Positions 8,982 to 48,100 of a stretch of DNA of 60,965 nt are shown in pieces; the stretch's first letter is position 1; each line of letters opens with the position of its first letter. Source of the DNA: Octopus bimaculoides (Eukaryota). A program made the translations under genes and the position numbers. The stretch spans positions 142,638,120 to 142,699,084 of the forward strand of contig NC_068983.1 in NCBI RefSeq assembly GCF_001194135.2, read 5' to 3'. The notes beneath the pieces are model-generated. The model was not told the DNA's origin, made no database searches, and saw only the letters and a program-made list of their open reading frames with translations.

Positions 8982-9135
8982 AAGGCGGCGAGCTGGCAGA
9001 ATCGTTAGCATGCCGGACAAAATGCTTAGTGGTATTTCGTTTGTCTTAACGGTCTGAGTTCAAGTGCCGCCAGGGTCAACTTTGCCTTTCATCCTTTCGG
9101 AGTTGGTAACATAAGTACCAGTTGAGCACTGGGGT
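8982..9135 (+). mobile_element. tRNA-derived SINE (second family), copy B, 3' truncated
   Basis: About 80% similar to copy A by eye; breaks at ACTGGGGT where LINE sequence begins. Confidence 0.8.
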
Positions 9136-16000: not shown

Positions 16001-17724
16001 TTGCTCGCTCACACTAGTATTAGATTTGAATTCTAGTTATTTTTGTGTTCTAAACATTGGTGTGCTAAACTCATATTGTTAAATACCTGTTTCTACCTCA
16101 TATCAGTCTCAAGTAGTCATAAAAAAAACAAGATTTAGAAATGTCTCATTTCTAACAAAACATTATAATCTGAAAGTAATATGTAAACCTTTAATGTTTA
16201 TATATATGTGTGTGTGTGTACTTTTTTTTGACAGGTTACAGATTAAAATTGAGTTCAGTTTCTCTAGCAACTGCATCTGTGATCTACCATAAATTTTTCA
16301 GAGAAAATTCTTTAAATGATTTCGACATCTATGTAAGTTGTTGCAATTTCATAAAATTTCTCTTGGAGGTGGGGAAAATCAGTTTTTTTCACTTATGTCA
16401 ATAAACTTTTGTTATAAGTTTTGCCTATCTGACTGATTAATTCTTAAGAGCTGTCAATAACATGTCACCCATTTGTTCACTGCTAGCTAATTAATTAAAA
16501 CATCTAACATTAAACTTGGATTGAACCTGTTACATTCTTCCAAAATATTTAATTACATTATTATGACTTTAGTATATTAATGTAATAATATAATGCCAGT
16601 CTGGTAAAAAAAATAAAATAAATGAAAAAATATCTGTACAAATCTTATGTAACACAGTATATGGGCATATGGTTGTTCTACCAATCAGTACTGATATTGG
16701 CTGCAACATCGTACATACACACAACATTTTTCACTCAGTTCAACCAAAGTTTTGTGAGTGGATTTGGTAGGTGAAAACTGAAAGGAGCCCATTGTGTGTG
16801 TTTCTGTATATACGTGTGTGTGTATATATGTATATATATATATATATAAATTTCAAAAAAGGATAAAACTCTTTTACAAGAATTTTATCAAAAAGCCAGT
16901 GTGTAAAAAAATTCATTAGGGAAATTTCTATTCCCAAGAACATAATTATTTGTATATATTTATATAAAGGGCATTATTATAGAAAAATAATAACGCCACA
17001 CAGTGGACTTCTCAAAAAATAACCACATTTAGTACCTATGCGAGGAAAAAACAACCAACAGAAGATGACCAACTTTCTTTTAAACTTAAGTCTATTTTAA
17101 AAGAAAGTTGGTCATCTTCTGTTGGTTGTTTTTTCCTCGCATAGGTACTAAATGTGGTTATTTTTTGAGAAGTCCACTGTGTGGCGTTATTATTTTTCTA
17201 TAGATGGAATAATGTGTTTGTGTCTCTTTATCTTGATATCAAATAATAGTTGTAAATAAAAATTCAATCACACAAGCAGTGCCATTCATTTCCAATATTC
17301 TGAGAACATGTCTGGCTATGGGGAAATACTACATTGCTTGGAAATAGGTGAAGGTTCACAACAGAAAGGGCTTCCAGCCATCAAGTGTCTGCCTCAGTAA
17401 ACTCCATCCAAATAAACTCATACAAGTATGAAAAGTGAACGTTAAAATGATGATGGTGACTGTATTTCATAAGAGATATATTAATGAAAGGATTAAGCAC
17501 TCAGTCCCTACATTGTTGATGATGTTTAGTCTCAAGTCAATTTCTACATTCAAAAGTATTCCCGTTTTGACTGACCTTATTGTGCTCTTCTTTTTTTGAG
17601 ATAGTAAAGTGTGATTTGTAGGGAAATTTTACTGGTATTTACAGCAGGCTGAGCAACCACAAAGTGTGTTTCCCTCATTGACTTGACTGCCATATTTGTC
17701 AGTTACCCAAAAATTGCTTACACC

Positions 17725-26149: not shown

Positions 26150-26830
26150 TAATCCCATCAATTTAAAACCCTTTTGGTTTCAAAGCGAAGAACTCTGAAA
26201 TGTCAGTTTCGACCTCCTCCTGACTTGCGAAAGTTATGTCCCCCAAATGATTCTGTAAACTACGAAACAAATGGTGGTCCGAAGGAGCAAGGTCGGGAGA
26301 ATAAGGTGGATGAGGAATTTTTTCCCAACCAAGCTCGTCAATCTTCTGTGATGTGATCTTTGCAGTGTGGGGTCACGCATTGTCCTGATGAAACATCACT
26401 CCTTTTTGATTCACTTAAGTGGGTCCTTTTTTCTTCGAAGCTTGGTTAAAACGCTCTAATTGCTGACAGTAGACTTGAGCGTTGATTGTTGCATTAGGTG
26501 GTAACAATTCAAAGTGAATTACTCCTTTGCAATCCCACCAAATAGAGAGAAGAACCTTTTTTCCATGAAATTCCCTTCTCGGTTGTGGTTGAGCTTTTTC
26601 CCTTTTAAGACATTTAACATTTCGATAGAAGATCCATTTTTCGTCACCAGTTACGAGTCTATCCAAAAAGGGTGAAATAGGTTCGTGAGAATGGAGAGAA
26701 GAGCAGATGTCAACTCGGGATTTGCAGTTGCTTTCAGACAATTCATGAGGCATCCATTTTCCAAGTTGTTGAAGATGACGATGAACAGTTGTATGGTTTG
26801 AAATAAGCTTCATTGCCAATTCTTCAACTG
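26150..26830 (-). mobile_element. Mariner transposase fragment
   Basis: WMPHEL, LVTGDEKWIFY, KKVLLSIWWDCKGVIHFELL in ORF 26415-26819. Confidence 0.85.
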
Positions 26831-26849
26831 ATAATTTTAAAACAAAGCA

Positions 26850-27640
26850 ATTTCTTCAATCAATGATATAATTACTGTTTCATTCCAGTATCTTCTACCT
26901 TCTTGTGAGCAGAGCCATTATTCCCTGTTCAAAGAATTTCCTGTTTTTACTAGCAAAAAATCTGTTCTAGGTGAATTTTTACATCCTCTTCAGAGTTGAA
27001 GGTCTGCCCATTTAGTGAATTTTGAAAACTGAAACTCATAGAAATCTGAAGGCACAAGGTTAGATAAGTATGGAGAGGGTGGCAAAACTTCCCAGCTAAC
27101 TTCTACCTCATCTGCAAAGTATACAGCCTGGCATTGTGGTGATGAAAGACAATGCCCATACAATTAGCAAGTGCTGGACACTTCCAGTGAATTGCTGCAT
27201 TTAATCTATCCAGCTGATCTATCTGAATTGATGATCCTGTATGTAAAAGACAACACCCAACTAGTCCCACCAAATTGAAAGCCTAACCTTCTTCAGATGA
27301 AGTCCTGCTTTGGAGGTTATTTGTAGTGGTTCACCATGCTTTTCCCATGACCATTTGTGCTTCACGTTGTTATAGATGATCCATTTTTCATCCCCTGTCA
27401 ACATTCTTTTAAAAATTAAAGGGATCTTTCTTTTCATATTTTTGCTATGAATTGCAAATGGAAATCTGTTGGGCAAGATTAGTTGCATTCAATTGATGTA
27501 AGATCCAAACATCAAGCCTATTGATGTAACCAAGTTGATGCAGATGATTTTCAACAATCAAGTTGAACATATTACCCTAAAGTCCATGCATCATATATGA
27601 TGCACATTCCCAATTTTTTTTTCAACTACAGAGTAACTTG
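26850..27640 (-). mobile_element. Second mariner transposase fragment
   Basis: LTGDEKWIIYNN, KKVRLSIWWD, downstream HHNAR and YLSNLVPSDFY-like motifs. Confidence 0.8.
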
Positions 27641-27819: not shown

Positions 27820-28487
27820 TTAATGTCTGCTTTCTATGCTGGCATGGGTTGGACAGTTTGACTGAGGACTGGCAAGCCAAAAGGCTGCACAAGGCTCCAA
27901 TCTGATCTGGCAAGGTTTCTACAGCTGGATGCCCTTCTTAACACCAACCACTCCAAGAATGTAGTGGGTGCTTTTTACATGCCACTGGCACAAGGGCCAG
28001 TCAGGTGATACTGGCATCAACCACGTTTGAATGGTGCTTTTTACATGCCACTGGCATGGAAGCTAGTCAGGCAGCACTGGCAACAACCACACTCTAATGA
28101 TGCTTTTTACATGCCACCAGCACAGGAGCCAGTCAGATGGCACTGGCAATGACCACGCAATGAGTTGTGGATTATTTTGTTTCTGTACTCTAATTGTCAT
28201 CATCATCATCGTTTAACGTCTGCTTTCCATGCTAGCATGGGTTGGATGATTCGACTGAGGACTGGCAAGCCAGCAAGCTGCACCAGGCTCCAATCTGATC
28301 TAGCAAAGTTTCTACAGTTGGATGCCCTTCCTAACGCCAACCACTCCGAGAGTGTAGTGGGTGCTTTTACGTGCCACCGGCACGAGGGCCAGTCACACAG
28401 TACTGGCAACGGCCTCGCTCAAATGATGTTTTTTACGTGCCACCTGCATGGGAGCCAGTCCAGCGGAACTGGCAACGACCTCGCTCC
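27820..28487 (-). mobile_element. Two tandem RTE 3'-UTR-derived repeats
   Basis: Reverse complement of the (GAT)n-tailed RTE 3' end, starting near 27820 and 28198. Confidence 0.8.
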
Positions 28488-28599
28488 ATGACATGAAACT
28501 ATTAGTAGCTCTTATTTAAATACTGTCTATATTAAATGATATTTATCTCTCATTGGATGGAGTACTTTTTTTGTTGATCCTACCTATAACAGAACAGTA

Positions 28600-29180: not shown

Positions 29181-30738
29181 CATATTACGATAAATCTAAA
29201 CAAACCATAGTTTGCCTTAGAAGTGCTGAAACATGTGTTATGAGATAATTTATTTTCAAACATTTAAACTGAGAAAACATTAGGTTCTCTGAGAAATTAA
29301 AGTTAAGATGACTGTATAGACAAAGGGTTGAATTACTTGTTTGCTAGTTACAAGTTCAAATCTGTTATTGGTGTTCCATTGCATTTCTGAACAAAATGCT
29401 ATTTTTAATATTTTCTTTATCTACAAACAATATAAAAATATCTACGGCATCAGGAAGAAATTTAGAGCTCACCTATTTTGAAAAGATAGACTTGATATTG
29501 GAGGCAGAGCAGAAAACAGAAACAATTTGAAATGTACAGTCCTGTACATAGGACCGCAGTGTTCTATTTCTCTACACTAGCAGAGATAACTGATGATCAT
29601 AAAACAATCACAAGAAGGGTAAAATTATAATTTTGAATTATAAATTATAATTATAAATTTTCTTTATAGGTACACGTTCTTCAATATTTAGACTTATACT
29701 ATGTTTCAATCAGTTTGCTCTCCTGCCAGTATTAATTGTCACATAGTACCAGATATCTACATAGTACCAGATCAGATTTGAACTAGAAACCTTTTTTCTA
29801 AATAAAGGGGTTTAATGGTTCAACCCACGCAGCCATAAAATAAGACACCTGTCAGAAATCAAAACAGCATAGATATAAATATTGTAAAAATGCTGGTCTC
29901 TAAAAATAAAAATTGTAAATAACACACCTGAAAACAGTTGAACATGTAAAAGAAAGAAAAAAAAAGACAAAGAGTCACAGTACTAAAAACATGTGACCCA
30001 AATTTAAACAAAGAAATAAAATTTATAATCAAACCCAAACTTAACTTATTTACAAATGATAAAATATCATCATCATTATCCTCATTATTCTTAACAGATT
30101 AAAATTCTAATGTTTAGTCTTAAATTTAGATTCATGGTTTTAAATGGATTAAGTCAGGATAACTTTCATGGATCAGATTTATCAGATATATTCTGCATTT
30201 ACAAAACCTACTGAAATTTTACTTCAAAATAAATGTTTCCTAAGTGGATAATTACAAATGTACACAAATATCACAGTAGAGAAACTAGAAGAAAAAAACA
30301 AACTCGCAGAATCTATTATATTTTTTTACTGAAATAAAATGTTTTGAAGAAAGAATTCATATTAAGAATACATATCTATTTACTTTCACAAAATACATAA
30401 TCCATATGTGAAGCTTTTCTTCCAAGGACAAAATGTTTCTTTCTCTAAAAGATTCTATTTACATAAGATACAAAAAATAAATAAATATAAACCAGAAAGT
30501 GCTGAATAAATATAATTTAGACTTTATATTACTTTTTCAGATTGTATCGTCTGTTTTCAGGCACAATAAGGTATAAGGATATAAGGAAAATAAAGTCACA
30601 TTGATTTCATTATATTTATATATGTACGCATGTATGTATTTACAACCTATTGATAGTTGATGGAAACAATAATAATAATGCACAGAATAAGAGATAGGAA
30701 AACATTTTTGCAAACAAATGCTTTCATTTGCATTAAGG

Positions 30739-30942
30739 TTATGTACTTCCTTGTAATCTTTCCTCAAGCATATTTATTCGCTGCTCTAATGAATTCATCT
30801 GAGTTACTACATCAGCAATCCTGGGGCCCGCATTATATATCCTTAACTCATGTTCCAATAACTCGATTTTGTTTGCTTTCTTAACAAGTACCTTCATTTT
30901 ATCCTCGTATACAGCAAGCCGTTGCTCCATCAAACTCATCGT
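30739..30942 (-). CDS. POC1: POC1 last exon ([16 protein letters not shown]...[10 protein letters not shown])
   Basis: Acceptor TTTTAG|; continues the Poc1 coiled-coil motif; ends in TAA. Confidence 0.88.
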   Translation of the reverse strand, partial: TMSLMEQRLAVYEDKMKVLVKKANKIELLEHELRIYNAGPRIADVVTQMNSLEQRINMLEERLQGST

Positions 30943-33900
30943 CTAAAATTAACAGAATTAAAACAGGTTATAGACTATTATGACTTCATGCAAGATGTTT
31001 GATATAAAAATATGAACAGCCCCAGCAAACCTAAAAGGCCAGTACTAAACTCTGAATTCATAAGGTTATTGACTAAGGTAAATCTCTATATCTCTAACAG
31101 TCTACTGTCATTTATATTCCCAAATAATTATTCTTAACAGCTGGGTGATTGATGTGTGAAGTATTAAGTGTACTACCTAAATACATAACAGAACACTTGC
31201 AGTCAATCTCAACAAAAGACCTGTGAGTTGCTTATTCAACACTATGCTTATTTGGCTATTATTTTACTTCTTTAACTTCTTTTCCACTTGATATCAAACA
31301 ACAAAAACTGCTAAAACTTCTTGTAACAAGTTGTTTGTAGAATATACTGAAGCGAATGATACCTTACTTTATATATATATATATATATATATATTAATAG
31401 TAATGATATGACAACAAAAAAATGAATGAGACCTCAATATTATGTAAATAGAGGAATTTATCTGTAATATAATATGTGACAATTATTCGGTTGCCATAAT
31501 AAAACTCCAAGTTTCGGATGTCGGGGCAGAAATCTGCTCCGGCATCTCATCTGTTATCAAGGCAATAAAAATTTTTTTCTGATTGCATTGATAATAGACG
31601 AGGTGCCAGAACAGATTTCCACCCCGACATCCGAAACTTGGAGTCTTATTGTGGCAACCGAATAATTGTCACATATTATATATATCATCATGATGATGAT
31701 GATATTGTTTAATGTCCATCGAGCTGACTAGGTATTTTATAGTATTTCTGTTATAGGTTCACTTCAAGTCAGAGTGAATGAAATTTGTTTCTCTTTCTTC
31801 TTTGGATTCTTTTGTATATTATGTAACATCTCTAAGAATTTTCCTTTGAAATCTTGTTGAAGAATGAGCTGTCATATCTTTACCAGCACATCAACAAGCA
31901 TGAAAATTCAAAGCAGAAATTTTCTAAAATCATTGTCAAATGTAAATTTGTGTCAGTTAAGTAAAATTTTTATAAGGCCTTATTTTCAAGGAAAGCGTCA
32001 TTAGACTGGTAGAATTAATGTAATTACAGAAGTTTGAACATCAAAACAAACTAATCGTAAAACTACTGAAGATTGACATCCAACAGATCCAATATCTTTT
32101 ATAATGCAGTTTACTGGCATGGCAAAATAAATGTTTGCTTGAAGGCCGTGTAACTGGCCAGGGTCACAGATTAGAAGAGAATAATCAAGATCAAACATGT
32201 GCATCATGATGTGTGTTAAGTTCCAAGACATAAATGATTGTAAAGTCTGGGCAACAGCCTGAAGAAATGATACTTCAGAATTTATTTAGGAGCGAGATCG
32301 TTGCCAGTGCCCCTGGACTGGCTCTTGTGCGGGTGGCACATAAAATACACCATTTTGAGCGTGGCCGTTGCCAGTACCGCCTGACTGGCCTTCGTGTGGG
32401 TGACACGTAAAAGCACCCAGTACACTCTCTGAGTGGTTGGCGTTAGGAAGGGCATCCAGCTGTAGAAACTCTGCCAAATCAGATTGGAGCCTGGTGTAGC
32501 CATCTGGTTCACCAGTCCTCAGTCAAATCGTCCAACCCATGCTAGCATGGAAAGTGGACGTTAAACGACGATGATGATCATGATCATGAAAGGATTGTTG
32601 AGACAGCAGGCAACCAATATTGTAGATTACTAAATTTAAAGTATACTTCTGCTACTGAGTCATTCAGAAATCAGTGATGTCAGCTTTTTGAATATTGTTC
32701 TTCCTAAGACCTGAAATGATATTTCTATGTCATAATCAAAAAGACAATTGTATCAGTGATGAGGAGCTTGTAACAATGTTGAATCAGATTAAACATTGTT
32801 AATGTTAGTTTTGCTAATTCCCAGCAGTTTGTTAGATACTTTGTATAATGGAACAAGTACAGATTCAGTTAATAAAGGTACACAAATTACATTTTTAAAA
32901 TTATTTTTACCATCTTACTGGTTTCAGCTATTTGACTGCTTAAGATATTTTATACAAAAGCAGGAAAGGTTATCTCCCTTCGTTTTTGAAATAGTTGTTA
33001 GAATGCAATACTAAATTTTCAGGAAACCACCATCTACAATCCGGTTTCACTTATATTGCCCATGCTCTCCACAAACAGCTTCTCTTATTAATATATGTTT
33101 GAGGAGATTTCTGTGCATATGTCATTCAATTTCTTTTGCAATTAGTTTGTTAATCTCAATTTGCTATTTAGGAAGTTATTCAATTAACATTAATAAATCA
33201 TCTAAAACTAATTAGATATAAAATTAAGAAACATGTATGTAAATTTGCATCTCACTTTCCATCTTTTGGCTTCCTATGAAAAAGTCCTCAAAGATAGAAC
33301 ATTTCAAATTTTTATTGCATATTTTAATTTCAAATTTATAAATATCCATGTACATTAGTTAATACAAAATGAAAAGCAAAACAAAATCTAGCATCCTTAC
33401 CTGAGTAACTGATTGCATCTGATCAACAATATTTCCAAGAGTTCTAGAAATCGAATTTTCAAGTGTATCCCAATTATGCAGCATTCCTAATAATACTTCC
33501 TGATAAGCAAAGATCATAATTTAGAACACAGAATAAAATGCAATTGTAAATTATATATATATTGGGAGCTCCTCTATGCTGATGACTTTGCTCTTATTGC
33601 TGAGACACTATCAGAACTAGAGGAGAAGTTTCAGGTGTGGAAATTTGGTATAGTGAAATAATTTTCCATGTGAAATCTAATTTTGTTCTTTATTTGTTCC
33701 AGAAAAATTGCAGAAAAATGTTACTGAGGTTTAAAGTTTAATCAATTTTACCTAATCAGAAAACACAATTAGGGAGCTGGCATTTTCTGCATAATAGCTG
33801 TCTATCACAAAATGAAAGCAAAATCATTACAAGAAGGAATTTTTATTAAACAAACGAAAGTAAAGAAATTATGATGACCAAAGTTGTAAGAACTTCTGAA

Positions 33901-36900
33901 GTTTTAATGAATAAAGTCATGAGAAACAGTTGAACAGACATGTGAATAATTTAAAAAAGAAAAAAATCCTAAACAAAGTTTTTTGTGGAAAATTGCATCA
34001 TCATTTAATATCGTTTAACACCCGCTTTCAATGCTGGCATAGGTTGGATGGTTTGACTGAGGACTGGCAAGCCAGGAGGCTGCACCAGGCTTCAATCTGA
34101 TCTGGTAAGTTTTCTAAAGTTGGATGCCATTCCTAACGCCAACCACTCTGAGAGTGTAGTGGGTGCTTTTTATGTGCCACTGGCATGGGAGCCAGTCAGG
34201 TGGCACTGGCACTGACCATGCTCAAATGGTGCTTTTTAACATTCCACCGGCATGGGAGTCAGTCAAGAGAAACTTGCATGACACACACTCAAGTGGTGCT
34301 TTTTACGTGCCACTAACACAGGAGCCAGTCAGATGGCACTGGCATCGACAATGCTCAAATGGTGCTTTCTACATACCACTGGCACAGGTGCCAATCAGGT
34401 AACACTGGCATCAGTCATGCTTCAATGAAGCTTTTTACATGCCACTGGCATCGGCCATGCTCGTATGGTGCTTTTTATGAACCACTGGCACGGGAGCCAG
34501 TCAGACAGCATTGGCATCAACCACGTTGGATCAACAGGCCTTCTCAAGCATGGCATATTGCCTACAATTGAAGGGGTACTTTTAAACTGGCCAGTTATGC
34601 AACACTGGCATCAGCCATGGCTACGATCTCACTTGGCTTACTGGGTCTTCTCAAGCACTTAATATCTCCAAAGATCTCAGTCACTTGTCATTGCCTCTGT
34701 GAGGCCCAACATTCGAAGATCATTCTTCACCACCTCATCCTGTATCTTCCTGGGTCTACCACTTTCACAGGTACTCTCCACTGTTAGGGTGTGACACTTC
34801 TTCATACAGTTGTCCTCATCCATACGCATGACCATAACAGCGCAGTCGTCTCTGTTGCACACCACATCTGATGTTTCTTATGTCCAACTTTTCTCTCAGG
34901 GCACTTACACTCTGCCATGTATGCACACTGACAATACACATCCAGCAGCGCATACTGGCTGCATTCCTTGCAAGCTTACGCATGTCTTCAGCAGTCACAG
35001 CCCATGTTTCACTGCCATGTAGCATGGCTGTTCATACACATGTTTCACTGCTATATAGCATAACACACAGGTATCATACACTCTACCTGTCACTCTGGGT
35101 GTGTTTACATCCCCATAACTTAGCAGTTTGATAAAAGAGATCAATAGAATAAGTGCTAAGTTTAAAAAATAAGTCCTGAAGTCAATTTGTTTGACTAAAG
35201 CCTTTCAAGGAAGCACTCCAGCATGGCCACAGTCAAATAACTGAAACAAGTAAAAGAATAAAAGAATATTATATTCACGGGGTTCTGAGTAGTTAAGGCA
35301 CCAGAATATAAATATAAAATCCATTGAATCAATGCCTTCTACAGCCAGTGTGCTGAGTACTCAGTTGAATTATTTCATGTTGCTTGCCATTGTACTTCTC
35401 TTTTCACAATTCACGCAATGTCAGTGATTGCATGAGTGCTATCCATTCTTTCATTCACATTGTTTTTACTGCACCTATTTATCAACGAGTTCTGATGTTA
35501 ACCAACTTAATGATTTTCATCTATCTATTGAGTATTGATAGTTTTCAATTGAAAAACACAATTTAATTTCTGAATGAAAGCCTGTTAAAAAGTGCGAAGA
35601 GTTTAGTGCATTTGTTAACATTTTAATTATACCATCATTTCAAATCAGGTGTATGTGAGACACAGTTTGTCCCACAGTTTTACTCCATATAGAGCAAACA
35701 AGAGAGCCCATATGCAGTGGCTCAACCTCCTACAAATAATAGTCATATCTCATTCAAATCATACCCTACTGGACAATGAATCTTGGATACATAAAATATG
35801 GAATGGTTATGAGTGGTATGTTTTAATTCACTCAATGATGTCTGACTATAGGCTAAACAAGAACCACATGCACTATTTTACTTCAATTTTTGAAGTTAGA
35901 AGACGTGTTATATTTCCTTCGTAGATGCTTTATAGGAAGAAATATAGCAATCCATCCAATACTTGAGTAGGTCAATCAGAAATATTAACATCAAATAAGA
36001 CAGACAAAAAGCTTAAAAGAAGAGGAAGAACAATATTGTGATAAGAAAATATAGACAACAATAAAGACTTACGGTTTGTTCTGGAGGAAAAGGAGCTGAA
36101 AGTTGACTTGCAGCAGCACCTTCACCACGTTCCATCTGCAGAGTGTAAAGAAAATGAAATATTTGAAGCAAATTATTTCTAGATACACTAGTTATTTCCC
36201 TGAATAAGAGTTTAAAAATTTGAAAAATTATATTAAGTCCAATACTGGCATGCCACTTCTATGGCTCAACTCCCTTCAGGAAAATAGCTCTGTTCAATAT
36301 GTCCATTATCTAGAAAAGGTGTAGGTAGAATTTCATACAGTGTATTCAGTGCAAACTATAAATACATAAGAGGTGCAGGGGAATCACAGGAAGGTTGACT
36401 GGGAAAATAGACTTTGTGTGTAGCAAATGTGCAGGAGGAATAAACACTGAACTCATACAGAAAACAGATCAACTCAAATATTCAGTTGGATCCCTAGTGG
36501 TAGCAAAGTTTTTATTACCTAGATGACCTAATTAGCTGTGAAATAGGATGTTCTGAACATACAGGCCCTAGAATAAGAAAAGGCTAGACAAAGTTCAGGG
36601 AACTGTTACTTCTGCTGATAATAAAAAGGTCTCTCTCACAGAGTGAAAGGCAGATTGTATAATTCTTGGGTACAGACAGCAATACTACATGGTAGTGAGA
36701 TGAGCCCTGAATGCAGGGCACAGGCAAAGACTAGAACGAAATGAAGCTAGCATGCTCCGCTAGATGTGCAACAACTACTAGATGTGAACAACAAATGTTT
36801 TGAGAGAAAAATTGGGCTTAAGAGGAATCAGATATAATGTGCAAGAGAGAAAACTGTGATGGTATGGTCATGCAATACATATGGATGAGGACAGCTGCCA

Positions 36901-39096
36901 ATCACTAAATGCGGATGGAACATGTAGAAGAGGGAGACCCCGGAAGATGTGAGAGAAAATAGTGAAGTCCAACTTTAGGATGTTGAACATCACAAAGCAA
37001 ATAATCAAGAACCAAGATGATTACTGATTTGCTGTACCAGAGAAGAGCCATTGCATCTTCACAGAAATGATCCCCTAAAAACATATGGTTTATGTATATG
37101 CCCCAGCACCCAATCTGTCCCTGTCAAGTTTTCCCCATCTCTCATCTTTCTAACACCCATCCCTCCACCATTCTCCTAACTACAGTATTACTCATTCAGC
37201 TGCTGAAATTATATGACAGTAGAACTACACATATTTCATCCCCTTTTGTGCTATCAGTTATCCCTTTCCTTGGAACCACTTCCTTTTGTAACCCAATCCT
37301 CATTTTCAGTATCATCCTTTCCCACTCTACTGTCCACTGAACATTTCTTTCCCATGATCTACAGACAATGACTACCATACCTAATCCTTAACACCCTCCC
37401 ATATCTTCTATCATTCACAATACCCTCTCTTATGTATCATCAACGGGCACCCACCTTTGTTCATTACACATTATATCCACCCATATGTACTCTGTCACTG
37501 AGGTTGCCATCTTTGTCATTGCACATCCTTCTTTCTCTCCCCCACTCCACCCAGTTACATCATCTTATTCTTCATCTATCTACAGTTTTATTATGCTGCT
37601 GCTCTTCGCCCTGCTTTTTCTATTGCCACTAATCCCCTTCTCCCTAACCCACTCCTACATCAGGGCTTAATTCTCTGCCTTCTACTATTTATTATAGTTC
37701 TTTAAACCATGACAAAGAGTTTAAGATTTATTTGTTGTACAAACTCCTTTATGTCAACATTCTAGTTCCTATAGTTGAATTAGTCAAAGAATTCGAAGAA
37801 AAATTACAAACTCATGCTAGAAAGGTAAAGAGGACATGAGATGGCAATGATAACTAAAAGTATTTGAAAAAAAAAACTCTTACATTTCCAACGGGAGTAC
37901 TGGCTCTAGCAGGTGCATCCTGATGTTGCTCTGGCAAAGCTTCTTCAGAGTCAGAACCGGAAGAGAAAGCATCTGCTAGACTCTGTCTCTGAGTAGTTGG
38001 ATGTGCCCTTGTAACAAGGTTCGCCTTCCAAACTAGAACCTGGAAATTAAGAAAAGAGATGTACATAAAAAAGAACTAAAATTAAAACAAAAATAAATTA
38101 GATAAAATACAGCTTCATTACAGTAACAGTATAAAGAAATACTAAGTGTTGACTGCTCTACTCTCACCTGTTTTTCAGAAGATACTTAAAATGTTCTATA
38201 TACATTCCAATAAGGAAATTATCATTTTTGATGATGCCACTCAAAAAAGGCTTGCTCAGTGGCTTTTCCCCTAAAACTTGGTGAGTGTAGATTTTACTTG
38301 AAAATAATTGTCACAATTTACAACTATAAAACATTACACAAGTCAGCATCTAATGTTTTATAGCTGTTCAATATGACAATTTCCTGCTCAAAAGCATAGC
38401 AAAATGACTGTCAAAGACTTCGACTAATATATTATGAGTTTGTAGTCCAATAGGTTATGCAATTCACTAATTCAGATCAACAACATATACTTTTATATTT
38501 CCCATTTCATTGTTGAGTGGTTAGAAGTAGCAAGGCATTCATGTTAGAGAAAAGACATTTCAATCATTATTTACATGGCAGTTGTTGACTTCAGTTCTAT
38601 ATTACCTTACTTTTGGTCCTCAAGGTTTCCATTACCTCTTGAATTTGTACTTTCTATATTCTTACTCAGTTCGTTTGGAAACAGGTATGATTGCTATTTT
38701 ATTTGTAAGTATATCTTTTTTAAGTATACCTTTTTGTAAGTATATCTTTCTCAGTTCTACCTCTAAATGAAAAATTGATAAAGGTTGATGGATGTTTAAT
38801 TTTAAAATGTTTATCTTTTAGGAAAAATATTTGCTTGAATTTAGGAAGATATGAGATAATGTTTTATATTGTTTCTTTAATCTAGGGATAAGGGCCTGGT
38901 GGTTTGTCTCTATTTCATGCCAAGGGAGACAACAGCATTGAAGTATTTCAAATTACAAGACAATGTATTTTGACATAGGATGTTAGTGTGAACTGACTGA
39001 AATAATAAGTGCCTTCCCCTAATGACTATAAGAAGAGAAAAGAGATATGAGTTTTACTATGTGAGGCACTAAACAAACAGTACAAATGAGGAGGAG

Positions 39097-39181
<85 letters not shown>

Positions 39182-42100
39182 TTCCAGAACCAATCAATTT
39201 CGTATATATACACATGGTCTTCAGGTAAGTTACAACAGTCATAACTTGCTGAATGGATTAACAAATCCTACATAACTGGATCTTTCTAAGACTGTTCTTT
39301 TCTTAAGATGGAACTTTGAGCCTGAAATATAAAGGTTTCATTAAACTTTCTGCATTGTCAGAAGCTGTCTAGTGCCGATCTCTAACTGTGGAAGGAACCT
39401 GTAGAAAAGGTAGACCCAAGAAGACCTGGGATGAGGTGGTGAAGCATGACCTCCGAACATTGGGTTTTGCTAAGGCAATGATGAGACCTTTGGAGATGTA
39501 CTGTGCTTGAGAAGACCCAGAAAGCTAAGTGAGATCGTAGCTATGGCCTATGCCAGTGTTGCATAACCAGCCCATTTAAGGGTTCCCTTCAATGTGCTGT
39601 GCTTGAGAAGACCTACTGAGTCAAGTAAAATCACTGTCATGGCTGATGTCAGTACCACTAGACTGGCTCCTATGCCAGTGGCACGTAAAAAGCACCATTC
39701 GAGCATGGATGATGCCAGTGCTGCCAGTGGAATGTAAAAAGCATCATTTGAGCTGGATTTGGTAGACAGAAACTGAAAGAAGCCCGTTGTATATATGTGT
39801 GTGNNNNNNNNNNNNNNNNNNNNNNNNNNNNNNNNNNNNNNNNNNNNNNNNNNNNNNNNNNNNNNNNNNNNNNNNNNNNNNNNNNNNNNNNNNNNNNNNN
39901 NNNCGTCCCTGTAACTTAGCGGTTCGGCAAAAGAGACCGATAGAATAAGTACGTAAAACACACCATTCAAGGATGGCCAATGCCAGTACCACATGACTGG
40001 CTCCTGTGTCCTGTGCTGGTGGCGTGTAAAAAGCACCATTCAAGCATTGTCATTGCCAGTTCCGGTGATATGTAAAAACCACCCACTACACTCTTGGAGC
40101 GGTTGGCATTATGAAGGGCATCCAACTGTAGAAACCTTGACAGAACAGATTGGAGTGTGGTGTAGCTTCCTGGCTTGCCAGTCCTCAGTCAAACCATCCA
40201 GCCTATGCCAGCATGGAAAGCAGATGTTAAAAGACGATGATGATGATGATGATGATGATATATTCCTTTAATCATCTTATTGTGTATCCCTTCAGATCCT
40301 ACACTAAACACTTTGACATATCCTTCCTTCTCAAAAATTATGAAATTCTCTCTGCTGTTCACGTTTTCTTCTGCAAATGTCAATCTACAAATCTTCAAAT
40401 TAGACTGAACACAGAGAAAACTGAGCCTTTTACTTGGATTAACTTATGAACAAAAATGTTCAGTGCATGCCTGATATTTAATATATTGATACCAGAAGGA
40501 TGAAAACCCAAATCAGAATCAAATTTGAAACCAGAACAAAGAGAGAAGTTAATATTATAAAGTATTTAATCCATCCCTCATGTTTTACAAAGTTGCTCTT
40601 CTGCTCTATTTTCTTTTTGTCAATATTAATCATAAATTAAAGAAATCTGCCAACATACCTGATTGTCCCCTCCTCCTGAGGCAAAGTAGTTACCATCTGG
40701 TGAGAAAATACAAGCAGTTGCACCATGCTAGTAGGAAAAAAATGGTAATGAATGAAATTTTCAAAATAAACAAACCCATGCTAGCATGGAAAGCGGACGT
40801 TAAACGATGATGATGATGAAAGAAAATTAAAAAAATATGAATATGAAGAGGAAGGTGTTTCTGGTAATGACCATAGCAATAATGAATAAATGATCACATA
40901 AAACAACACTTATGAATCAAAATGCTTATCATCATCATGATTAAATGTCCATTTTCCATGCTAGCATGCGTAGGACTGTGCATGTGTTATTCTTGGTTTA
41001 ATGATCTTCCCAAAACACAAGATTTGTTCAACACATGTATTCACATCAAGAATCTTGTAAACCAAATGCAAAGACAAAGTAAAGACAGGGAACCAGCAAG
41101 TTGTAGGGCTCTATTGAGCTCCAATGTGATCTTTGACATGGTTTCTACAGATAGATGCCCTTCCTAACACCAACCACTTTACAGAGTGTACTGGGTGCAT
41201 TTTTTTTTTTTTTTGACAGCCACCAATACTAGTCAATTTGCCATGTAACTTACAAAATAGAAAGAAAAGAGAAAAAGAAAAGGCTCCTACTACTAAGAGA
41301 AAGCATTTGGGAGAGGAAGATGGAGATAGGTGGGTTTGTGCCAGATGTTGAAAGGATAAAGTATGAGAGAGAGAGACAAGCACAGGAGTGTCATTATAGA
41401 GGAAATATATAGTTGAAGGAGATAAGAGGAAGGTAGTGATGGGGTGCTAGAGTGAAATCTCAAGGAACAAGGAGAGCATGAGAGCATAGGTGGTAGATCA
41501 GAGGAGGGGACTAGAGAGTAGATGCTTTCTTAAGAATAAGGATGGAGTAAACACACACACACACACACACTCACATATATACATATGTGTGTGCTACTGT
41601 CTCTTTGCTTCGGCTTAGCTTGACAGCTGCTTAATGAAGTGCTAATCTCTAAATGTTGAAGGAATAAGTGGAAGAGAAAGACCCAGGAGAATGTGGGACA
41701 AAGTGGAGAAAGATGATCTTGAGATGCTGAACCTCACAGAGGAGAGACAAAGGACTCAGATAATTGAGGATTTGCTGTGCTTGAGAAAACCTGTCCAGCT
41801 AAGTAAAATTGTAGCCAGAAACCATGCCAGCATGGAAGGCAGATGTTAAATGATGATGACAAAAGCATGTCCTTTATGTCCATGCCCATTCCTCTGTATG
41901 CAATCTGTTTCCTGACAAAGCCCGCCCCCTTTCCCCTACCTACACTCACCATTTGCTGTATTCCCCTCCCTTCCCCATAATTTCCCACTCTCTCTCATGA
42001 ACCTACCTCACACAATATGTCCCTCCTGAGTCGCTTCTCCACAACATATCTCTCCTTATTTGTGCCCCACTCCATCTCCCACACTCCTAATGCAATCTCG

Positions 42101-45100
42101 CAAACTTACTTGCCCACTTACCCTCTCCAATCCCTGGTCCTCTTCACTATATGCACCTCCATGTAACTTGGGTATATGCCTCACCTCACCTTTCTCTCCA
42201 TTCTTTCTCTGAGATAGCCATGTTTCTTCTCTGCTACAGGGTTCAATACAAATGACTGGGGTAGCTGTACCCTCAGTTAAGGAGCATTGTCCTGCAAGTT
42301 ACTTGGTGACCTTGCTGGTGCTGGTGCCACATAAAAAGCGCCCAGTGCACTCTGCAAAATGCTTGGCATAAGGAAGGGCATCCAGCCATAGAAACCATGC
42401 CAAAGCAGACAGCAGAGCTTAGTGCAACCTTCTTGCTGACATGCCAGTTCCTGTCAAACCATCAAACCCATGCCAGTATGGAAAACAGATATTAAATGAT
42501 GATTGTTTACCTACCTTATGACCATAAAGAGTGTAATATTGATGCCCTTCAATCAAATCAAAGATCTTTAATGTGTTATCATCTGCTGCTGATAGTAAAT
42601 AATTACCAGAGTTATGAATTGAAATACTATTCACATTACTAGTATGATCTGGTAAAAAGTAAAAAGAAAAAAAAACATAACTTTTTTAAATTGATTTTTA
42701 ACATTTTATTTTGGTTTATTCTAAATTAAAACAAGTTCATTTCTTAATATGATGTGAGGCACAATGGTTGTGACATTAAAAAAAAAAAACGAAACATAGC
42801 TATGGGCTCAAATCTGACTGAGTAAAGCTCATAACACTACAAATGACCAGTTTCCACTGCTACTGGATAAGTTGTGACTGATTTGTTGTTGCTTAGCATT
42901 GAAGTGAGGTAGTTGATAGCTTCCGCTATCTGGGTGACCAAATTAGAAGTGGGGGTGGGTGCGCTGAAAGTGTAGCTGCTAGAATAAGAGTAGCCTGGGC
43001 AAAGTTCAGAGAGCTCTTACCTCTGCTGGCGACAAAGGGACTCTCACTCAGAGTAAAAGGCAGACTGTATGACGCATGTGTACGAACAGCCATGCTACAT
43101 GGCAGTGAAACATGGGCTGTGACTGCTGAGGACATGCGTAAGCTCGCAAGGAATGAAACCAGTATGCTCCAATGGATGAGTAATGTCAGTGTGCATACCC
43201 GACAGAGTGTAAGTATCTTGAGAGAAAAGTTGAACATAAGAAGCATCAGCTGTTGTGTGCAAGAGAGACGATTGCGCTGGAATGGACATGTGACGAGAAT
43301 GGACGAGGATAGCTGCATGAAAAAGTGCCACACCCTAACAGTTGAGGGAACCAGTGGAAGAGGTAGGCCTAGGAAGACCTGGGCTGAGGTGGTGAAGCAA
43401 GACCTTTGAACATTGGGCCTCACCGAGGCAATGACTTCTGACCGAGACCTTTGGAAATATGCTGTGCGTGAGAAGACCCAGCAAGCCAAGTGAAACCTAA
43501 ATCCAAGGCCTCTGCCAGGGGTGTAGCCAGCCCACTTATGCGTACCTTTCCTTCTTTGGACAAGAAAACTCTGCTTGCGAAGACTTGTTGAGGCAAGTGA
43601 AATTGAAACCGAACTAAATTCGACAACTGGCATCCATGCCAACGTCGTCTCCTTCATTGGACACGAAACTCAGCTTGCGAAGACTTATTGGGGCAAGCAA
43701 AATCAGGATGGCACCTATGCCCAGCCTCGCCTTTCTGGCACTTGTGCCCGTGGCATGTGTAAGGACTTTCGAGCGAGATCGTTGCCAGTGCCCCTGGACT
43801 GGCTCTTGTGCGGGTGGCACATAAAATACACCATTTGAGCGTGGCTGTTGCCAGTACCGCCTGACTGGCCTTCGTGCCAGTGGCACGTAAAAGCACCCAC
43901 TACACTCTCTGAGTGGTTGGCGTTAGGAAGGGCATCCAGCTGTAGAAACTCTGCCAAATCAGATTGGAGCCTAGTGTAGCCATCTGGTTTCACCAGTCCT
44001 CAGTCAAATTGTCCAACCCATGCTAGCATGGAAAGCAGACGTTAAACGATGATGATGATGATGATGAATATAAAAAATATTTGAATAGTTTAAATCTTCA
44101 CACTCAAATTACTCACCCTTGAAATGAAGTAATCTCATCTTTACCCTTAAGTCCCAAAGTTTCACACTGAAATCATTACAACCAGTTGCAATTGAAACAT
44201 CTTCAGGGGTAAACTGGAGGTCATAAACTGCGCTGCACAGACAGTAAAATAAAATTTAATCAAACTTACAACACAAATTATACTGATGAAAAAAATGCTA
44301 TGTGAAATGGTTATTTTCATATTTGTTTAAACACTTGTTATCAGATTCTTTGACAGATGCTAAATGGAACAGTGAAAGTATCAGTGACCTATTAGTGATG
44401 AAATTAAACTAATGTCTGTTTAGCCATTGTAATTGGCTACACAAATTTCAATAAGGGTGATACTATATATTTCATTATCATTGAATGCTTGCTACAGTGA
44501 TTTTCTCTTTGCTAAAAACTTCTATAGTTATCTAAGAACAGAAATCAAAGGTACCACATCCTGACACAAACTTAAGCTGCAGCTTATCTAAGTTAATTTT
44601 CTTCCTAATTATTTGTACACGATTCATCAGTGTCATGCCACAGCAGCTGCTTTTTTCTAGAACATATCTCCTTTGCCCTTGTAACAGTTGATGAGGGTAC
44701 AGCTACACTAGTCATTTGGAGTGAACCCTTTTTGTCAGCTGACTGACTAGTGGGTGTTCTACTTCAGATATTTTCAACATCTCAGCAACTAACTCCAATG
44801 GTCTGACTACTTTCCTTATCTTCAAATCTTTAATGGCCATTTCAGTCTTATAGCTGTGAAATTCAGTAACTGATCCTTTGTTGGATCAAATTGCATAGTC
44901 CCTCTCTCCTATGCCTTCCCCTCATTCAGCAACCTCTCATATTAGCATTTTCTCACTATTAGTGAAGGCAAGTACATTACTGTCATTCTGTACAGACATT
45001 TTCCCAATGACATCTTAATTCATACTGGCACATTGCTTTGCAATTCACAACACCTCAAATCTCTGCTCCCCTCTTTGCAGAACATTAGCAAACCACTTCT

Positions 45101-48100
45101 TTCTGAACTACGTCTAACTTCTCTTTTAACTAATTGATACTCTTCCTTCTAGAAACTTGCTTCATCCACAGATGTGGTCTGAAGCTCAGAGCAGCTTTGT
45201 TTCATTGACACTCTTAGTTGTCTCCTATGTTTTCATTGCCTCTTCATTCTCAAAATACACAGCAACCACCCAACATTGGTTTGAACCTACATCTGGCAGT
45301 TTCCATAACTTCCTTCACCAGATTATCTGCATCTCTGGGTCTGTATAGCTCTTAATCTAAATGTCACTAAACAGTAGGAAAGACTTAAAATTCACAACCA
45401 TCTGTCTATGACGTTTCCTGGTGAGGATAAGGGCTATTTGGCTTGAATGTTCACCTGGGTAGTGGATGATCAGGTGGTTAGCCACTTGCAGTACTAACTT
45501 CTGGAAACTGGCTATTTGCACCACAGAACTCCAAGAGACTTGATTCTTCTTCATTTCATGTACCATAACCATAGGCTCTGTGTATGTTCAAATATGTGTA
45601 TATAGACAACGGTTTTTCTCTGGAGATGATAACTGTCTACATCGATATAAAATGTCAGAAAATTTTTTAGATTCCCTTTGACAAATGAAATATGTCATAA
45701 AGAAATTTATAGAAAATAAATGCCTGATGTACAAACATTTTAGGAACCCAAACTACAGGATGATGTAGAAATAAATTCAGGATAATAAATACAAAGGTAG
45801 AACACCTAATAAAATAAGCAACTATACATCGAGTGTATTGTATGAAAGAGAACATTTGCCTATAGAAAAAATGAACACAACAGTCATTAAATCCAATCAT
45901 AAACAAGTATTATTTCTCTAAATTCCCAAAACAAATAGGTACTGTAAAAAATAATCAATGGTGACTAACACAGAATTAATACAAAAAAGTAATAATTTTC
46001 TACCACTTAAAAGTGGATGTTGTGTTACAACACAGAATACTGAGATAGTTACCAGGAGGGGACCTCTCATATGACTTTGTGGTGCATATAAGCACTTCTG
46101 TTTATATTATTAGAGGGAGATAATCACTGCCATTGCCAGTACCAGATCACATGGCTTCAGCCTTCCTTGGCCTTGTCAATGGTAGACAGAGCCAGTCATT
46201 AGTTTTGGTTTTAAGTAGCAGAGAAGCAAAATAGTTCCTTGGTTGCAGTTCTATTATAGACAAAAGGTTTTAGATTTATATATATGTAGGAAAATAATAC
46301 AATGTGACATACATCTTTCTCAAGGCCATCAAGAACATTAGTGGAGTAAAATGAAATCAAAACAACCAGGAAATGAAATTCATAAGCAAAACTTACCCTG
46401 TTTCTTTGAGTGTTTGTACACATTTTTTGGAACGAAGATCAAACAAACGCACAGTTTTGTCATCACCTCCAGAAGCCACAAAATTCATGTCATGCGAAAA
46501 CCTGAAATAAATTTGAACGGAGATGTGTTGATTTGTGCTGCCTCCAAGAAGTAAGGCGGAGAGAAGGTTCCACTAGGTTCCTCACAGGCAAAGAACACAG
46601 GTACAAGATTTTCTGGGCAGGGAACACTGACGGGATCAGATGCATGGGTATACTTCTTGCGGAGAAATGGGTTGATAAAGTAATCGAGGTAGTCAGAGTA
46701 AGCAACAGAATACTTAAGATTAGATTAGTGCTTCATCATGGGTTAGCAAACATTATCTTGGCTTATGCCCCTCAGCCGGGGCTACCGGATGGGCAGAAAG
46801 ACAGATTTTATGACACCCTCTTGCAGACCACCTCATAAACAAATTACAGGGACCTTCTCTTTGTGGCTGGTGACTTCAATGGACATGTAGGACAACATGC
46901 AGGGGGCTTCCATGGCATATATGAAGGCTACGATTTTGGTTCCCGCAATGAAGAGGGAACCAGGCTGCTGGAGTTCTGCAATGCAAATGATCTTATGGCT
47001 TGCAATACTAACTTCAGGAAACCTGCCAGTCACCTAGTCACCTACCGTTCTGGCAGGCACACTAGCCAAATTGACTACATCCTCGCCAGAAAAAGGGAAA
47101 GATGGCTGCTTATAAATGCCAAACCCTTCCCAGGCAAAGAATATACCCCTCAACATAGACTGGTAGTTAGCAACTTCAGGATCAGGTCTATATGGATGCC
47201 CAGAAGACGACCAGCATGGAGGAGAAGGGACTGGAAGCTTAAAGATCCTGCAAATGTCCTTCTTTAGTCAGTTTATATAATTTATAAGACAACNNNNNNN
47301 NNNNNNNNNNNNNNNNNNNNNNNNNNNNNNNNNNNNNNNNNNNNNNNNNNNNNNNNNNNNNNTTTTTTTTTTTTTTCATATATAGAAAGCAAAAACTAAT
47401 TAATTATAAAGAAGGGGTAATTTGGGGCTTACTTTACTGAGAATGGAAGAATATAAAGTAAAACTGACTTTGGCAAAATTTGATTTCAGAAGACAGAACA
47501 AAGTTAAAGGTCAATCACTTATTTCAGCCAACTCACCTAAATTACATATGATTATTAATTGTAAAGGAGATGGGAAGCAATAAATAACAAGTAGCAACCT
47601 TGTGGTCAGTAGAGCCTGCTATAAACTTCAGTTCTCAGTTGAAACAATTTTACTTCATTGACACAGAAATGTTGGCAGAGAACTGAATTGGTATTAAACA
47701 ATCAAAAGCTCATATCCTATAGGTGAAACTATGCTCAAAAGCATTTCCTTTGTGATGAGCCATCTACTACTGATCACACAACTGAAATTCTGTATTATCA
47801 TCACCATTGTTTAAACCAGGAGTTTTCAAACTTTTTGACTTGCGGACCCCTTTATATTTTAGGCTTTACCTTAGGGACTCCCTTATAAACGCTTATGAAA
47901 TTTACACATAAATATTTGCTTAAAATAACATTTTTACATTTATTTATTTAACTGTATTTAACAAATAGGTTTATTGTCAATTAAAAGATTTCGATTAAAA
48001 AACATATATAAAATCAAATTGCCCATAAAGAGTATTTGCTGTCCATGGACTCCCTGTTTTGTTCTTGCGGACCCCTGTGGTCCGGGGACCACAGTTTGAA

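What the first reader, a model, noticed from the sequence alone, without database searches (positions are those of the whole stretch)
31468..31680. Head-to-head double hammerhead-like palindrome in the last POC1 intron
Each arm reads outward from the centre as stem I (TGATAA), NAGANGA, long stem II, GAAAC, palindromic stem III, then the UH triplet and stem I partner. Both arms have A at core position 4, so this may be a family variant and not random decay. On either strand the transcript could fold as one long hairpin (editing substrate) or as a ribozyme, and the two folds are mutually exclusive.
Basis: partly seen in the sequence, partly recalled or inferred. Interest (0 to 1): 0.7.

Follow-up and report, generated by a model that had tools for sequence, protein, structure and literature searches.

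The report
Decayed hammerhead-like motifs in intronic palindrome
A 215-base mirror-image DNA insertion in a gene intron carries, in each half, a worn-out look-alike of a self-cutting hammerhead RNA; it is most likely a dead remnant of a mobile element and not a working ribozyme.

Summary
The palindrome is real: arms 31467-31571 and 31577-31681, 105 nt each, 89% complementary. Read from the centre outward, each arm has the order of a type-I hammerhead: stem I, C/U-A-G-A-N-G-A, stem II, GAAA, short stem III, U-H, stem I partner. The left arm (minus strand) matches 10 of 11 core bases with all three helices. It is the only such site in the window, against about 0.007 expected per window by chance. 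The right arm matches 9 of 11 and its helix II no longer pairs.

No Rfam hammerhead model matches, even at E<=10. No second copy was found in the window or in any searchable collection, so the family-consensus test could not be run. A4 is shared only because the two arms are copies of one sequence. Published complete mutagenesis finds that every single change in the CUGA turn gives low activity. Any transcript folds into a 105-bp hairpin (-148 to -158 kcal/mol, against about -48 for the arms folded apart), which hides the ribozyme fold.

Best reading: a decaying head-to-head mobile-element insertion in TA-rich intron DNA. The layout matches published inverted, 5'-truncated Penelope-like element insertions, which carry hammerheads near their 3' ends. 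An ordinary foldback MITE with a chance resemblance remains a serious rival. Interest is low to moderate.

The parts
31467..31681 (.). Whole 215-bp near-perfect palindrome (foldback insertion)
   Evidence: arms 105 nt, 89% complementary; hairpin -147.9 kcal/mol, z -23.9
31467..31571 (-). Left arm; its minus strand is the sense strand of the better-preserved hammerhead-like motif
31577..31681 (+). Right arm; its plus strand carries the more decayed hammerhead-like motif (U3, A4, helix II collapsed)
31567..31581 (.). Centre AAAAATTTTTTTCTG: a self-complementary A5/T5 core plus an asymmetric TTCTG; junction of the two inner (5') ends
   Evidence: Read
31547..31553 (-). Core box CAGAUGA of the left arm (C3 A4 G5 A6 U7 G8 A9); A4 at 31552
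31516..31546 (-). Helix II hairpin of the left arm (31 nt, about 11 pairs with interruptions, -14.8 kcal/mol)
31503..31515 (-). GAA (G12-A14), 3-bp helix III with UGG loop, and U17; predicted cleavage site would be between 31503 and 31502
31497..31502 (-). 3' strand of helix I (UUAUUA), pairing with UGAUAA at 31554-31559
31595..31601 (+). Core box UAGACGA of the right arm (U3 A4 G5 A6 C7 G8 A9); A4 at 31596
31633..31651 (+). Right arm GAA, helix III, C17 (31645) and helix I partner UUAUUG
31370..31397 (.). (TA)n microsatellite about 70 nt to the left; the palindrome ends themselves merge into ATAT(A/T)ATAT, so no target-site duplication can be defined
31686..31705 (.). (ATC/ATG)n microsatellite immediately to the right of the palindrome
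30742..30942 (-). Last coding exon (coiled-coil C-terminus, ttttag acceptor, stop at 30739-30741) of the minus-strand WD40 gene; the palindrome lies about 525 nt upstream in the preceding intron

Best explanation
The feature is a roughly 215-bp head-to-head (3' ends outward) insertion of a non-autonomous mobile element in TA-rich, microsatellite-rich intron DNA. Each arm is a copy of the same roughly 105-nt element end, and that end carries a type-I hammerhead-like motif about 40 nt from the outer terminus.

Origin (inferred). Four features fit the published description of Penelope-like element (PLE) insertions: the layout, the lack of a poly(A) tail, the (TA)n-type target with no definable target-site duplication, and a hammerhead near the outer ends. 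Those insertions are heavily 5'-truncated, often have an inverted 5'-truncated copy abutting, carry hammerheads near the 3' end, and are biased towards microsatellites. The PLE enzyme has been shown in vitro to nick and extend both DNA strands. That would produce exactly two outward-facing cDNA copies. Here they could have joined at the self-complementary A5T5 centre. I therefore think the hammerhead likeness is inherited from an HHR-bearing retroelement lineage and is not chance.

Present state (shown or strongly inferred). The motif is a relic. U4 is A in both arms, a change in the CUGA turn where all single mutants have low activity. The right arm also has C3 changed to U and a collapsed helix II. 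The arms have drifted 11% apart, mostly by transitions and CpG decay, with no compensatory change. Any transcript containing both arms folds into a 105-bp hairpin about 110 kcal/mol more stable than the separately folded arms, so the ribozyme fold is masked.

The only plausible present-day activity is as an intronic double-stranded RNA, a possible ADAR or Dicer substrate. That is inference only.
For: - Palindrome and hairpin.
- Hammerhead-like topology appears as the minimum-free-energy fold of the left arm alone. All 23 model pairs form in the left arm.
- It is the only descriptor hit in the window, against about 0.007 expected per window. That is about 2.5e-5 for a 215-bp stretch.
- Arm differences are 10 transitions and 2 transversions, four of them at CpG sites. 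Window CpG observed/expected is 0.39.
- A CpG-corrected ancestor still forms helix II at -6.7 to -10.7 kcal/mol.
- PMC4209133: PLE hammerheads have a long helix II, a short helix I and G10.1-C11.1. 'Dual min-HHRs' are found 100-700 bp apart on opposite strands and attributed to truncated PLEs. Core variants exist (U3-A8), and in vitro activity is low.
- PMC8557442: PLE insertions are 5'-truncated, often with an inverted 5'-truncated copy adjacent; hammerheads lie near the 3' ends; (TA)n target bias makes target-site duplications undiscernible.
- PMC11167929: the PLE protein cleaves and extends both strands, and hammerhead-dead mutants still insert.
- PMC9901934: CUGA-turn single mutants all have low activity.
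Against: - Only one locus is available. No other copy was found in the window or in the metagenome, viral and prokaryote collections, and none by six-frame protein search. Family structure, varied truncation points and linkage to a PLE reading frame are therefore all untested.
- No PLE coding sequence was seen in the window. The reverse-transcriptase fragment goes with LINE-type AP-endonuclease fragments.
- No Rfam hammerhead model matches.
- The PLE hallmark of an unpaired base between A9 and G10.1 is absent. Instead there is a bulge on the 3' side of helix II.
- A second, unrelated, perfect palindrome of almost the same size (107-nt arms, 16978-17202) lies in the same window. This suggests the genome hosts foldback MITE-like elements in general, which favours the rival.
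- The near-symmetric truncation of both arms is more natural for a foldback element than for two independent truncations.
- The empty-site test in a related species was inconclusive.
Confidence: 0.45

Rival explanations
1. It is an ordinary foldback MITE, a non-autonomous DNA transposon whose inverted repeats span nearly the whole element. The hammerhead resemblance is a coincidence that a reader looking for such motifs picked out.
For: - The structure is a near-perfect palindrome with a small loop, flanked by TA.
- A second, unrelated, perfect palindrome of nearly the same size (16978-17202) lies in the same window.
- Mariner-type transposase remnants are present in the window.
- No Rfam hammerhead hit, a core mismatch at a sensitive position and no compensatory changes.
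- At about 0.007 chance sites per 61 kb, a Gb-sized genome holds hundreds of chance matches.
Against: - The chance of such a motif falling inside this particular 215 bp is about 2.5e-5.
- The motif sits where PLE tails carry theirs, sense strand outward in both arms.
- There is no definable target-site duplication or terminal motif of a known DNA-transposon superfamily.
- The ends show no similarity to anything else in the window, including the mariner remnants.
Confidence: 0.35
2. It is a local inverted duplication of unique intron sequence, for example by replication template switching, and not a mobile element at all. The hammerhead likeness is chance.
For: Only one copy was found anywhere I could search. 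The empty-site comparison does not prove an insertion.
Against: The collections searched do not contain the source genome, so absence of copies says little. The low chance probability of the motif applies here as well. The location between microsatellites and the clean palindrome ends look like an insertion.
Confidence: 0.07
3. It belongs to a family of U4A-variant hammerheads that still self-cleave, perhaps as dimers or with protein help. The hairpin and ribozyme folds would form a regulated switch in the intron.
For: The left arm keeps 10 of 11 core bases and all three helices, and the hammerhead-like junction is its minimum-free-energy fold. PLE hammerheads tolerate some core variants and cleave poorly in vitro anyway.
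Against: - All single mutants of the CUGA turn have low activity.
- The right arm has lost helix II and C3.
- The hairpin is about 110 kcal/mol more stable, and the antisense arm is transcribed first on either strand.
- Each transcript holds only one sense copy, so a cis dimer is impossible.
- There is no covariation.
Confidence: 0.03
4. It is a hairpin-RNA or microRNA-type gene selected for small-RNA production.
For: It forms a long stable hairpin. Many Rfam microRNA-precursor models match weakly.
Against: All those matches are far below gathering scores and spread over unrelated, mostly plant, families. That is the generic behaviour of hairpin models on inverted repeats. The arms are decaying neutrally: 12 differences, all weakening the hairpin.
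Confidence: 0.03

Closest known systems
Minimal or atypical type-I hammerheads of Penelope-like elements (Cervera & de la Pena 2014, PMC4209133)
   Same: Type-I topology, long helix II, short helix I, a G10.1-C11.1 pair and a short, partly self-complementary helix III. They occur as 'dual' motifs close together on opposite strands, attributed to truncated elements. Core variants and very low intrinsic activity are documented.
   Different: A at position 4 is not among the variants described there. There is no unpaired base between A9 and G10.1; instead there is a bulge on the 3' side of helix II. Helix II is even longer (31 nt). No PLE reading frame or family could be linked to this copy.
Inverted, 5'-truncated insertion structures of Penelope-like elements (Craig et al. 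2021, PMC8557442; PAc biochemistry, PMC11167929)
   Same: Head-to-head arrangement with 3' ends outward, no poly(A), hammerhead near the outer ends, insertion in TA-rich or microsatellite DNA with no discernible target-site duplication. The enzyme primes on both strands.
   Different: Here both copies are cut down to about 105 nt and are almost symmetric, with no full-length partner. Nothing ties the sequence to a known PLE clade.
Foldback or palindromic MITEs
   Same: Short (about 215 bp), non-coding, near-perfect inverted repeat with a tiny loop, TA-flanked and intronic. A second element of the same build is in the window.
   Different: MITEs are not known for carrying hammerhead cores. No family, target-site duplication or matching autonomous transposon end was found here.
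Canonical metazoan type-I hammerheads and non-LTR retrozymes (Rfam Hammerhead_1, RF00163; PMC7229834)
   Same: Type-I order of elements, 6-bp helix I, short helix III with a small loop.
   Different: Those occur in head-to-tail tandem repeats of 170-400 nt with a canonical CUGAUGA core and loop-loop contacts. Here there is an inverted pair, A4, no Rfam match at E<=10 and no tandem array.

Membership tests
Hammerhead ribozyme (type I) | All 11 conserved core nucleotides (C3 U4 G5 A6 G8 A9 G12 A13 A14 A15.1 U16.1) | tested here: not met
   Left arm 10/11 (A4). Right arm 9/11 (U3, A4)..
Hammerhead ribozyme (type I) | Three helices around the core in type-I order, with H at position 17 | tested here: met
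   Left arm: all 23 model pairs form, and the junction is the minimum-free-energy fold. The right arm fails, with five non-pairs (four in helix II) and a model energy of +6.1 kcal/mol.
Hammerhead ribozyme (type I) | Match to a curated covariance model (Rfam hammerhead families) | tested here: not met
   No hammerhead family at gathering score or at E<=10, on the region or on each arm alone.
Hammerhead ribozyme (type I) | Helices supported by covariation among family members | tested here: inconclusive
   Only the two arms are available. Their 10 differences inside the 71-nt hammerhead model (12 over the whole 105-nt arm) include no compensatory pair: two give G-U, and four break helix II in the right arm.
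Hammerhead ribozyme (type I) | Site-specific self-cleavage after position 17 | not testable with these tools
   Needs an in vitro transcription and cleavage assay. Published mutagenesis predicts low activity for U4A.
PLE-associated hammerhead | Long helix II, short helix I, G10.1-C11.1 | tested here: met
   Helix II has about 11 pairs in 31 nt, helix I has 6 bp, and the G-C closing pair needs an adjacent one-base bulge. Criteria.
PLE-associated hammerhead | Unpaired nucleotide between A9 and G10.1 | tested here: not met
   No register gives both this extra base and a G10.1-C11.1 pair (read).
PLE-associated hammerhead | Self-complementary 15.2-16.2 / loop 3 allowing a dimeric helix III | tested here: inconclusive
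   CUUGGAG pairs with itself only through two G-U pairs and has a central G-G mismatch.
PLE-associated hammerhead | Lies in the pseudo-LTR or 3' region of a Penelope-like element; many copies in consensus families | not testable with these tools
   The source genome is not searchable here. No copy was found in the accessible collections, and no PLE reading frame was seen among the large ORFs of the window.
PLE insertion architecture | 5'-truncated copies joined in inverted orientation, microsatellite/(TA)n target, no clear target-site duplication | tested here: met
   Head-to-head arms with the sense 3' ends outward. The ends merge into ATAT(A/T)ATAT, with (TA)14 70 nt to the left and (ATC/ATG)n immediately to the right. 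Criteria. The same features also fit a foldback MITE.
MITE (DNA-transposon derivative) | Terminal inverted repeats plus a target-site duplication of fixed length | tested here: inconclusive
   The inverted repeats are trivially present. TA-rich palindromic ends make any duplication from 2 to 9 bp equally readable.
MITE (DNA-transposon derivative) | Multiple dispersed copies; ends matching an autonomous transposon | tested here: not met
   No other copy, and no similar end, in the 61-kb window, which contains mariner-type remnants. The whole genome could not be searched.

The most novel reading that the evidence does not exclude
The element is one copy of an undescribed family of palindromic mobile elements. 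In that family each arm would encode a U4A-variant type-I hammerhead that is still catalytically competent, for example when one arm is transcribed alone or when the RNA is unwound. The ribozyme fold would compete with an ADAR/Dicer-substrate hairpin as a switch.
Probability: 0.03. Interest if true: 0.7.

Novelty: new member of a known kind. Interest (0 to 1): 0.25.

Why it matters
If the Penelope-like origin holds, this locus is a compact example of the inverted, double-primed insertion products of those elements. It would also show how hammerhead cores survive as recognisable fossils inside introns, which is useful for annotating 'hammerhead-like' hits in animal genomes and for separating relics from active ribozymes. 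It would not change what is known about ribozyme catalysis. For the host gene, the practical consequence is a 105-bp intronic double-stranded RNA, which could attract RNA editing or small-RNA processing. If the resemblance is chance in a MITE, the finding is ordinary.

Tried and rejected
- Rfam at gathering scores on the whole window gave nothing. Rfam at E<=10 on the region and on each arm alone gave no hammerhead family. It returned only generic microRNA-hairpin models far below threshold and a chance Na+ riboswitch match at E=0.02.
- I looked for other copies with two conserved 22- and 27-mers at 3 mismatches, blastn with word size 7, and an nhmmer profile of both arms against the window. 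None were found.
- Pattern scans of the metagenome, viral and prokaryote-genome collections with CpG-degenerate 21- and 22-mers gave nothing, or two chance 21-mer matches that do not extend (L004, L005).
- A six-frame translation of the element searched against 5.8 billion proteins, to catch spurious ORFs over other copies, gave none.
- Orthologous empty site: the only relative found (Logan contigs L001-L003, 82% identical to window 29677-31382) ends about 50 nt short of a decisive overlap. Alignment with the palindrome removed scores 128.5 against 127.5 with it present, so the test is inconclusive.
- Confirming the gene as POC1: the WD40 exons and the coiled-coil last exon fit, but the protein search found nothing at 1e-10. 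PDB matches are generic WD40 or coiled-coil proteins, with POC1 only one among many.
- Supplementary sequence files of the two key PLE papers are not held.
- The second palindrome at 16978-17202 shows no sequence similarity to this one.
- The idea that the excess of transitions records RNA editing was rejected. A ratio of 10:2 is unremarkable given CpG observed/expected of 0.39 and four CpG-site changes.
Full report
**Observation**

The window holds a 215-bp near-perfect palindrome. Its arms are 31467-31571 and 31577-31681, 105 nt each and 89% complementary. This is within one base of the coordinates given. As RNA it folds into a single hairpin of -147.9 kcal/mol (z = -23.9). The minus-strand transcript, which is the sense strand of the host gene, folds at -158.1 kcal/mol.

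- **Left arm, minus strand:** UGAUAA / CAGAUGA / 31-nt hairpin / GAA-A / CU-UGG-AG / U-U / UUAUUA.
- **Right arm, plus strand:** UGAUAA / UAGACGA / 31 nt / GAA-A / CU-UGG-AG / U-C / UUAUUG.

Both arms have A where the hammerhead core has U4. The right arm also has U at C3.

**Is it more than chance?**

Folded on its own, the left arm gives a three-way junction with helices I, II and III as its minimum-free-energy structure (-21.6 kcal/mol, z = -3.3). The right arm does not.

I wrote a relaxed type-I descriptor with these requirements:
- at most 1 mismatch in C3 U4 G5 A6 G8 A9 G12 A13 A14 A15.1;
- U16.1 fixed and H17 not G;
- helix I of at least 5 bp and helix III of at least 3 bp;
- helix II a hairpin of -4 kcal/mol or better.

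It finds only the left arm in all 61 kb on both strands. It gave 5 hits in 710 first-order Markov simulations of the window and none in the reversed window. That is about 0.007 per window, or about 2.5e-5 for a 215-bp stretch.

The likeness is therefore notable locally. The descriptor was written after seeing the site, however, and a Gb-sized genome would still contain a few hundred such chance sites. The two arms are copies of one sequence and are a single observation.

**Curated models and family evidence**

No Rfam family reaches its gathering score anywhere in the window. At E<=10 no hammerhead family matches the region or either arm alone. The hits are generic microRNA-hairpin models far below threshold.

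No second copy turned up by any route:
- in the window;
- in the metagenome, viral or prokaryote contig collections, where there were only two non-extending 21-mer coincidences;
- among predicted proteins, searched with the six-frame translation.

**What the two arms say about selection**

The arms differ at 12 of 105 positions: 10 transitions and 2 transversions, four of them at CpG sites. The window has CpG observed/expected of 0.39, so this is ordinary decay.

Mapped on the hammerhead model, none of the differences is compensatory. Two give G-U. Four break helix II in the right arm, and a fifth breaks a pair in the outer extension of helix I. The right arm's model energy is +6.1 kcal/mol, against -15.3 for the left arm. 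One left-arm helix-II pair (A-U) owes its existence to a CpG-to-TpG change. A CpG-corrected ancestor still forms helix II, at -6.7 to -10.7 kcal/mol.

A4 was therefore present in the progenitor of this insertion, and nothing indicates selection on the fold since then.

**Would it work?**

A complete single- and double-mutant scan of a hammerhead found low activity for all single mutants in the CUGA turn. Only the C3G/G8C swap was rescued (PMC9901934). That predicts a crippled A4 core. This agrees with the classical mutagenesis as I recall it (Ruffner et al. 1990; from memory, not checked here).

Structurally, the hairpin beats the separately folded arms by about 110 kcal/mol (-158 against -48). 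On either strand the antisense arm is transcribed before the sense arm. Each transcript contains only one sense copy, so the dimeric mode used by short-helix-III hammerheads is not available in cis. I conclude the motif is not a working ribozyme at this locus.

**What it most likely is**

The architecture has these features:
- two copies of one element end joined head-to-head with the sense 3' ends outward;
- no poly(A) tail;
- a hammerhead-like motif about 40 nt from each outer end;
- insertion between a (TA)14 tract and an (ATC/ATG)n tract;
- ends that dissolve into ATAT(A/T)ATAT, so that no target-site duplication can be defined.

This matches the published description of Penelope-like element (PLE) insertions. 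Those show strong 5' truncation, often have an inverted 5'-truncated copy abutting, carry hammerheads near the 3' ends, and show (TA)n or microsatellite target bias with indiscernible target-site duplications (PMC8557442).

Cervera and de la Pena reported that PLE hammerheads have a long helix II, a short helix I and a G10.1-C11.1 pair. They also reported core variants and poor in vitro activity. Motifs occur as 'dual' copies 100-700 bp apart on opposite strands (PMC4209133).

A purified PLE protein nicks and extends both target strands, and hammerhead-dead mutants insert normally (PMC11167929). Priming on both strands would give exactly two outward-facing copies. The self-complementary A5T5 at the centre (31567-31576) could be where the two cDNAs annealed. 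That last step is my inference.

**The main rival**

An ordinary foldback MITE with a chance resemblance remains serious. A second, unrelated, perfect palindrome of almost the same size lies at 16978-17202, with 107-nt arms that are 100% complementary. Mariner-type transposase remnants are in the window. The near-symmetry of the arms is natural for a foldback element. The PLE hallmark of an extra base between A9 and G10.1 is missing. No PLE reading frame is nearby.

The only related-species sequence I could obtain is Logan contigs L001-L003, 82% identical over window 29677-31382. It stops about 50 nt short of a decisive overlap. Alignments with and without the palindrome score 127.5 and 128.5. 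The insertion status is therefore unproven, although arm divergence (11%) below the between-species divergence (17.5%) predicts an empty site there.

**Gene context**

On the minus strand there are WD40 exons at 46396-46482, 44112-44213, 42515-42637 and 40656-40727. A last coding exon at 30742-30942 has a ttttag acceptor and a coiled-coil sequence.

This is POC1-like architecture, and a POC1 chain is among many WD40 matches in the PDB. I could not confirm the name. The palindrome lies about 525 nt upstream of that last exon, so 'last intron' is reasonable.

**Verdict**

The sequence observation is confirmed. This is a hammerhead-like relic pair inside a decaying palindromic mobile-element insertion, probably of Penelope-like ancestry (0.45) and possibly a chance resemblance in a MITE (0.35). 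It is very unlikely to be an active A4-variant ribozyme or switch (0.03).

It is at most a new member of a known kind. Interest is 0.25.

Noticed in passing
window 16978-17202: A second palindrome of nearly the same build: arms 16978-17084 and 17096-17202, 107 nt, 100% complementary, 11-nt loop, TA-flanked (TATAGAAAAATAATAACGCC...). It has no sequence similarity to the element studied and no hammerhead-descriptor hit. It looks like a very young foldback MITE-type insertion.
   Followed up: partly
window 38306-38381: A small 76-bp palindrome (31-nt arms, 84% complementary). Its left end shares the 13-mer AATAATTGTCACA with the terminus of the studied element. This is probably chance (blast E about 0.7).
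   Followed up: no
window 28165-28491, 32285-32568, 34011-34660, 40774-41203, 42333-43958, 48564-49264: Many copies, in direct and inverted orientation, of a short interspersed repeat whose spurious ORFs read ...[17 protein letters not shown].... Inverted pairs are 76-87% complementary. It appears to be the dominant SINE-like family of this genome.
   Followed up: no
window 26418-26855 (-) and 27261-27488 (-): Mariner-type transposase remnants (Pfam Transposase_1, E = 2.7e-22). Their ends show no similarity to the palindrome termini.
   Followed up: partly
window 9092-9757 (-), 46839-47264 (+), 51509-52417 (-): LINE fragments: AP-endonuclease (Exo_endo_phos), reverse transcriptase (RVT_1, E = 7e-22) and a PHD-like zinc finger downstream of the RT. 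No GIY-YIG or Penelope-type reading frame was seen among the large ORFs tested.
   Followed up: partly
whole window: GC 36.8% and CpG observed/expected 0.39, with TpG and CpA in excess (1.27). This indicates germline CpG methylation decay. The window contains 270 N in short assembly gaps.
   Followed up: yes
L001-L003 (Logan SRR11869391, SRR11869390, SRR11869384) vs window 29677-31382: A related species shares 82% nucleotide identity over the intron, last exon and 3' flank. The last coding exon, however, is only 65% identical at the protein level, so this coiled-coil C-terminus evolves fast. All three contigs break at the same point inside microsatellite sequence.
   Followed up: partly
window 31613-31659 (-): Weak Rfam match to the Na+ riboswitch aptamer (19.4 bits against a gathering score of 40.5, E = 0.02) inside the right arm. 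I regard it as chance.
   Followed up: no
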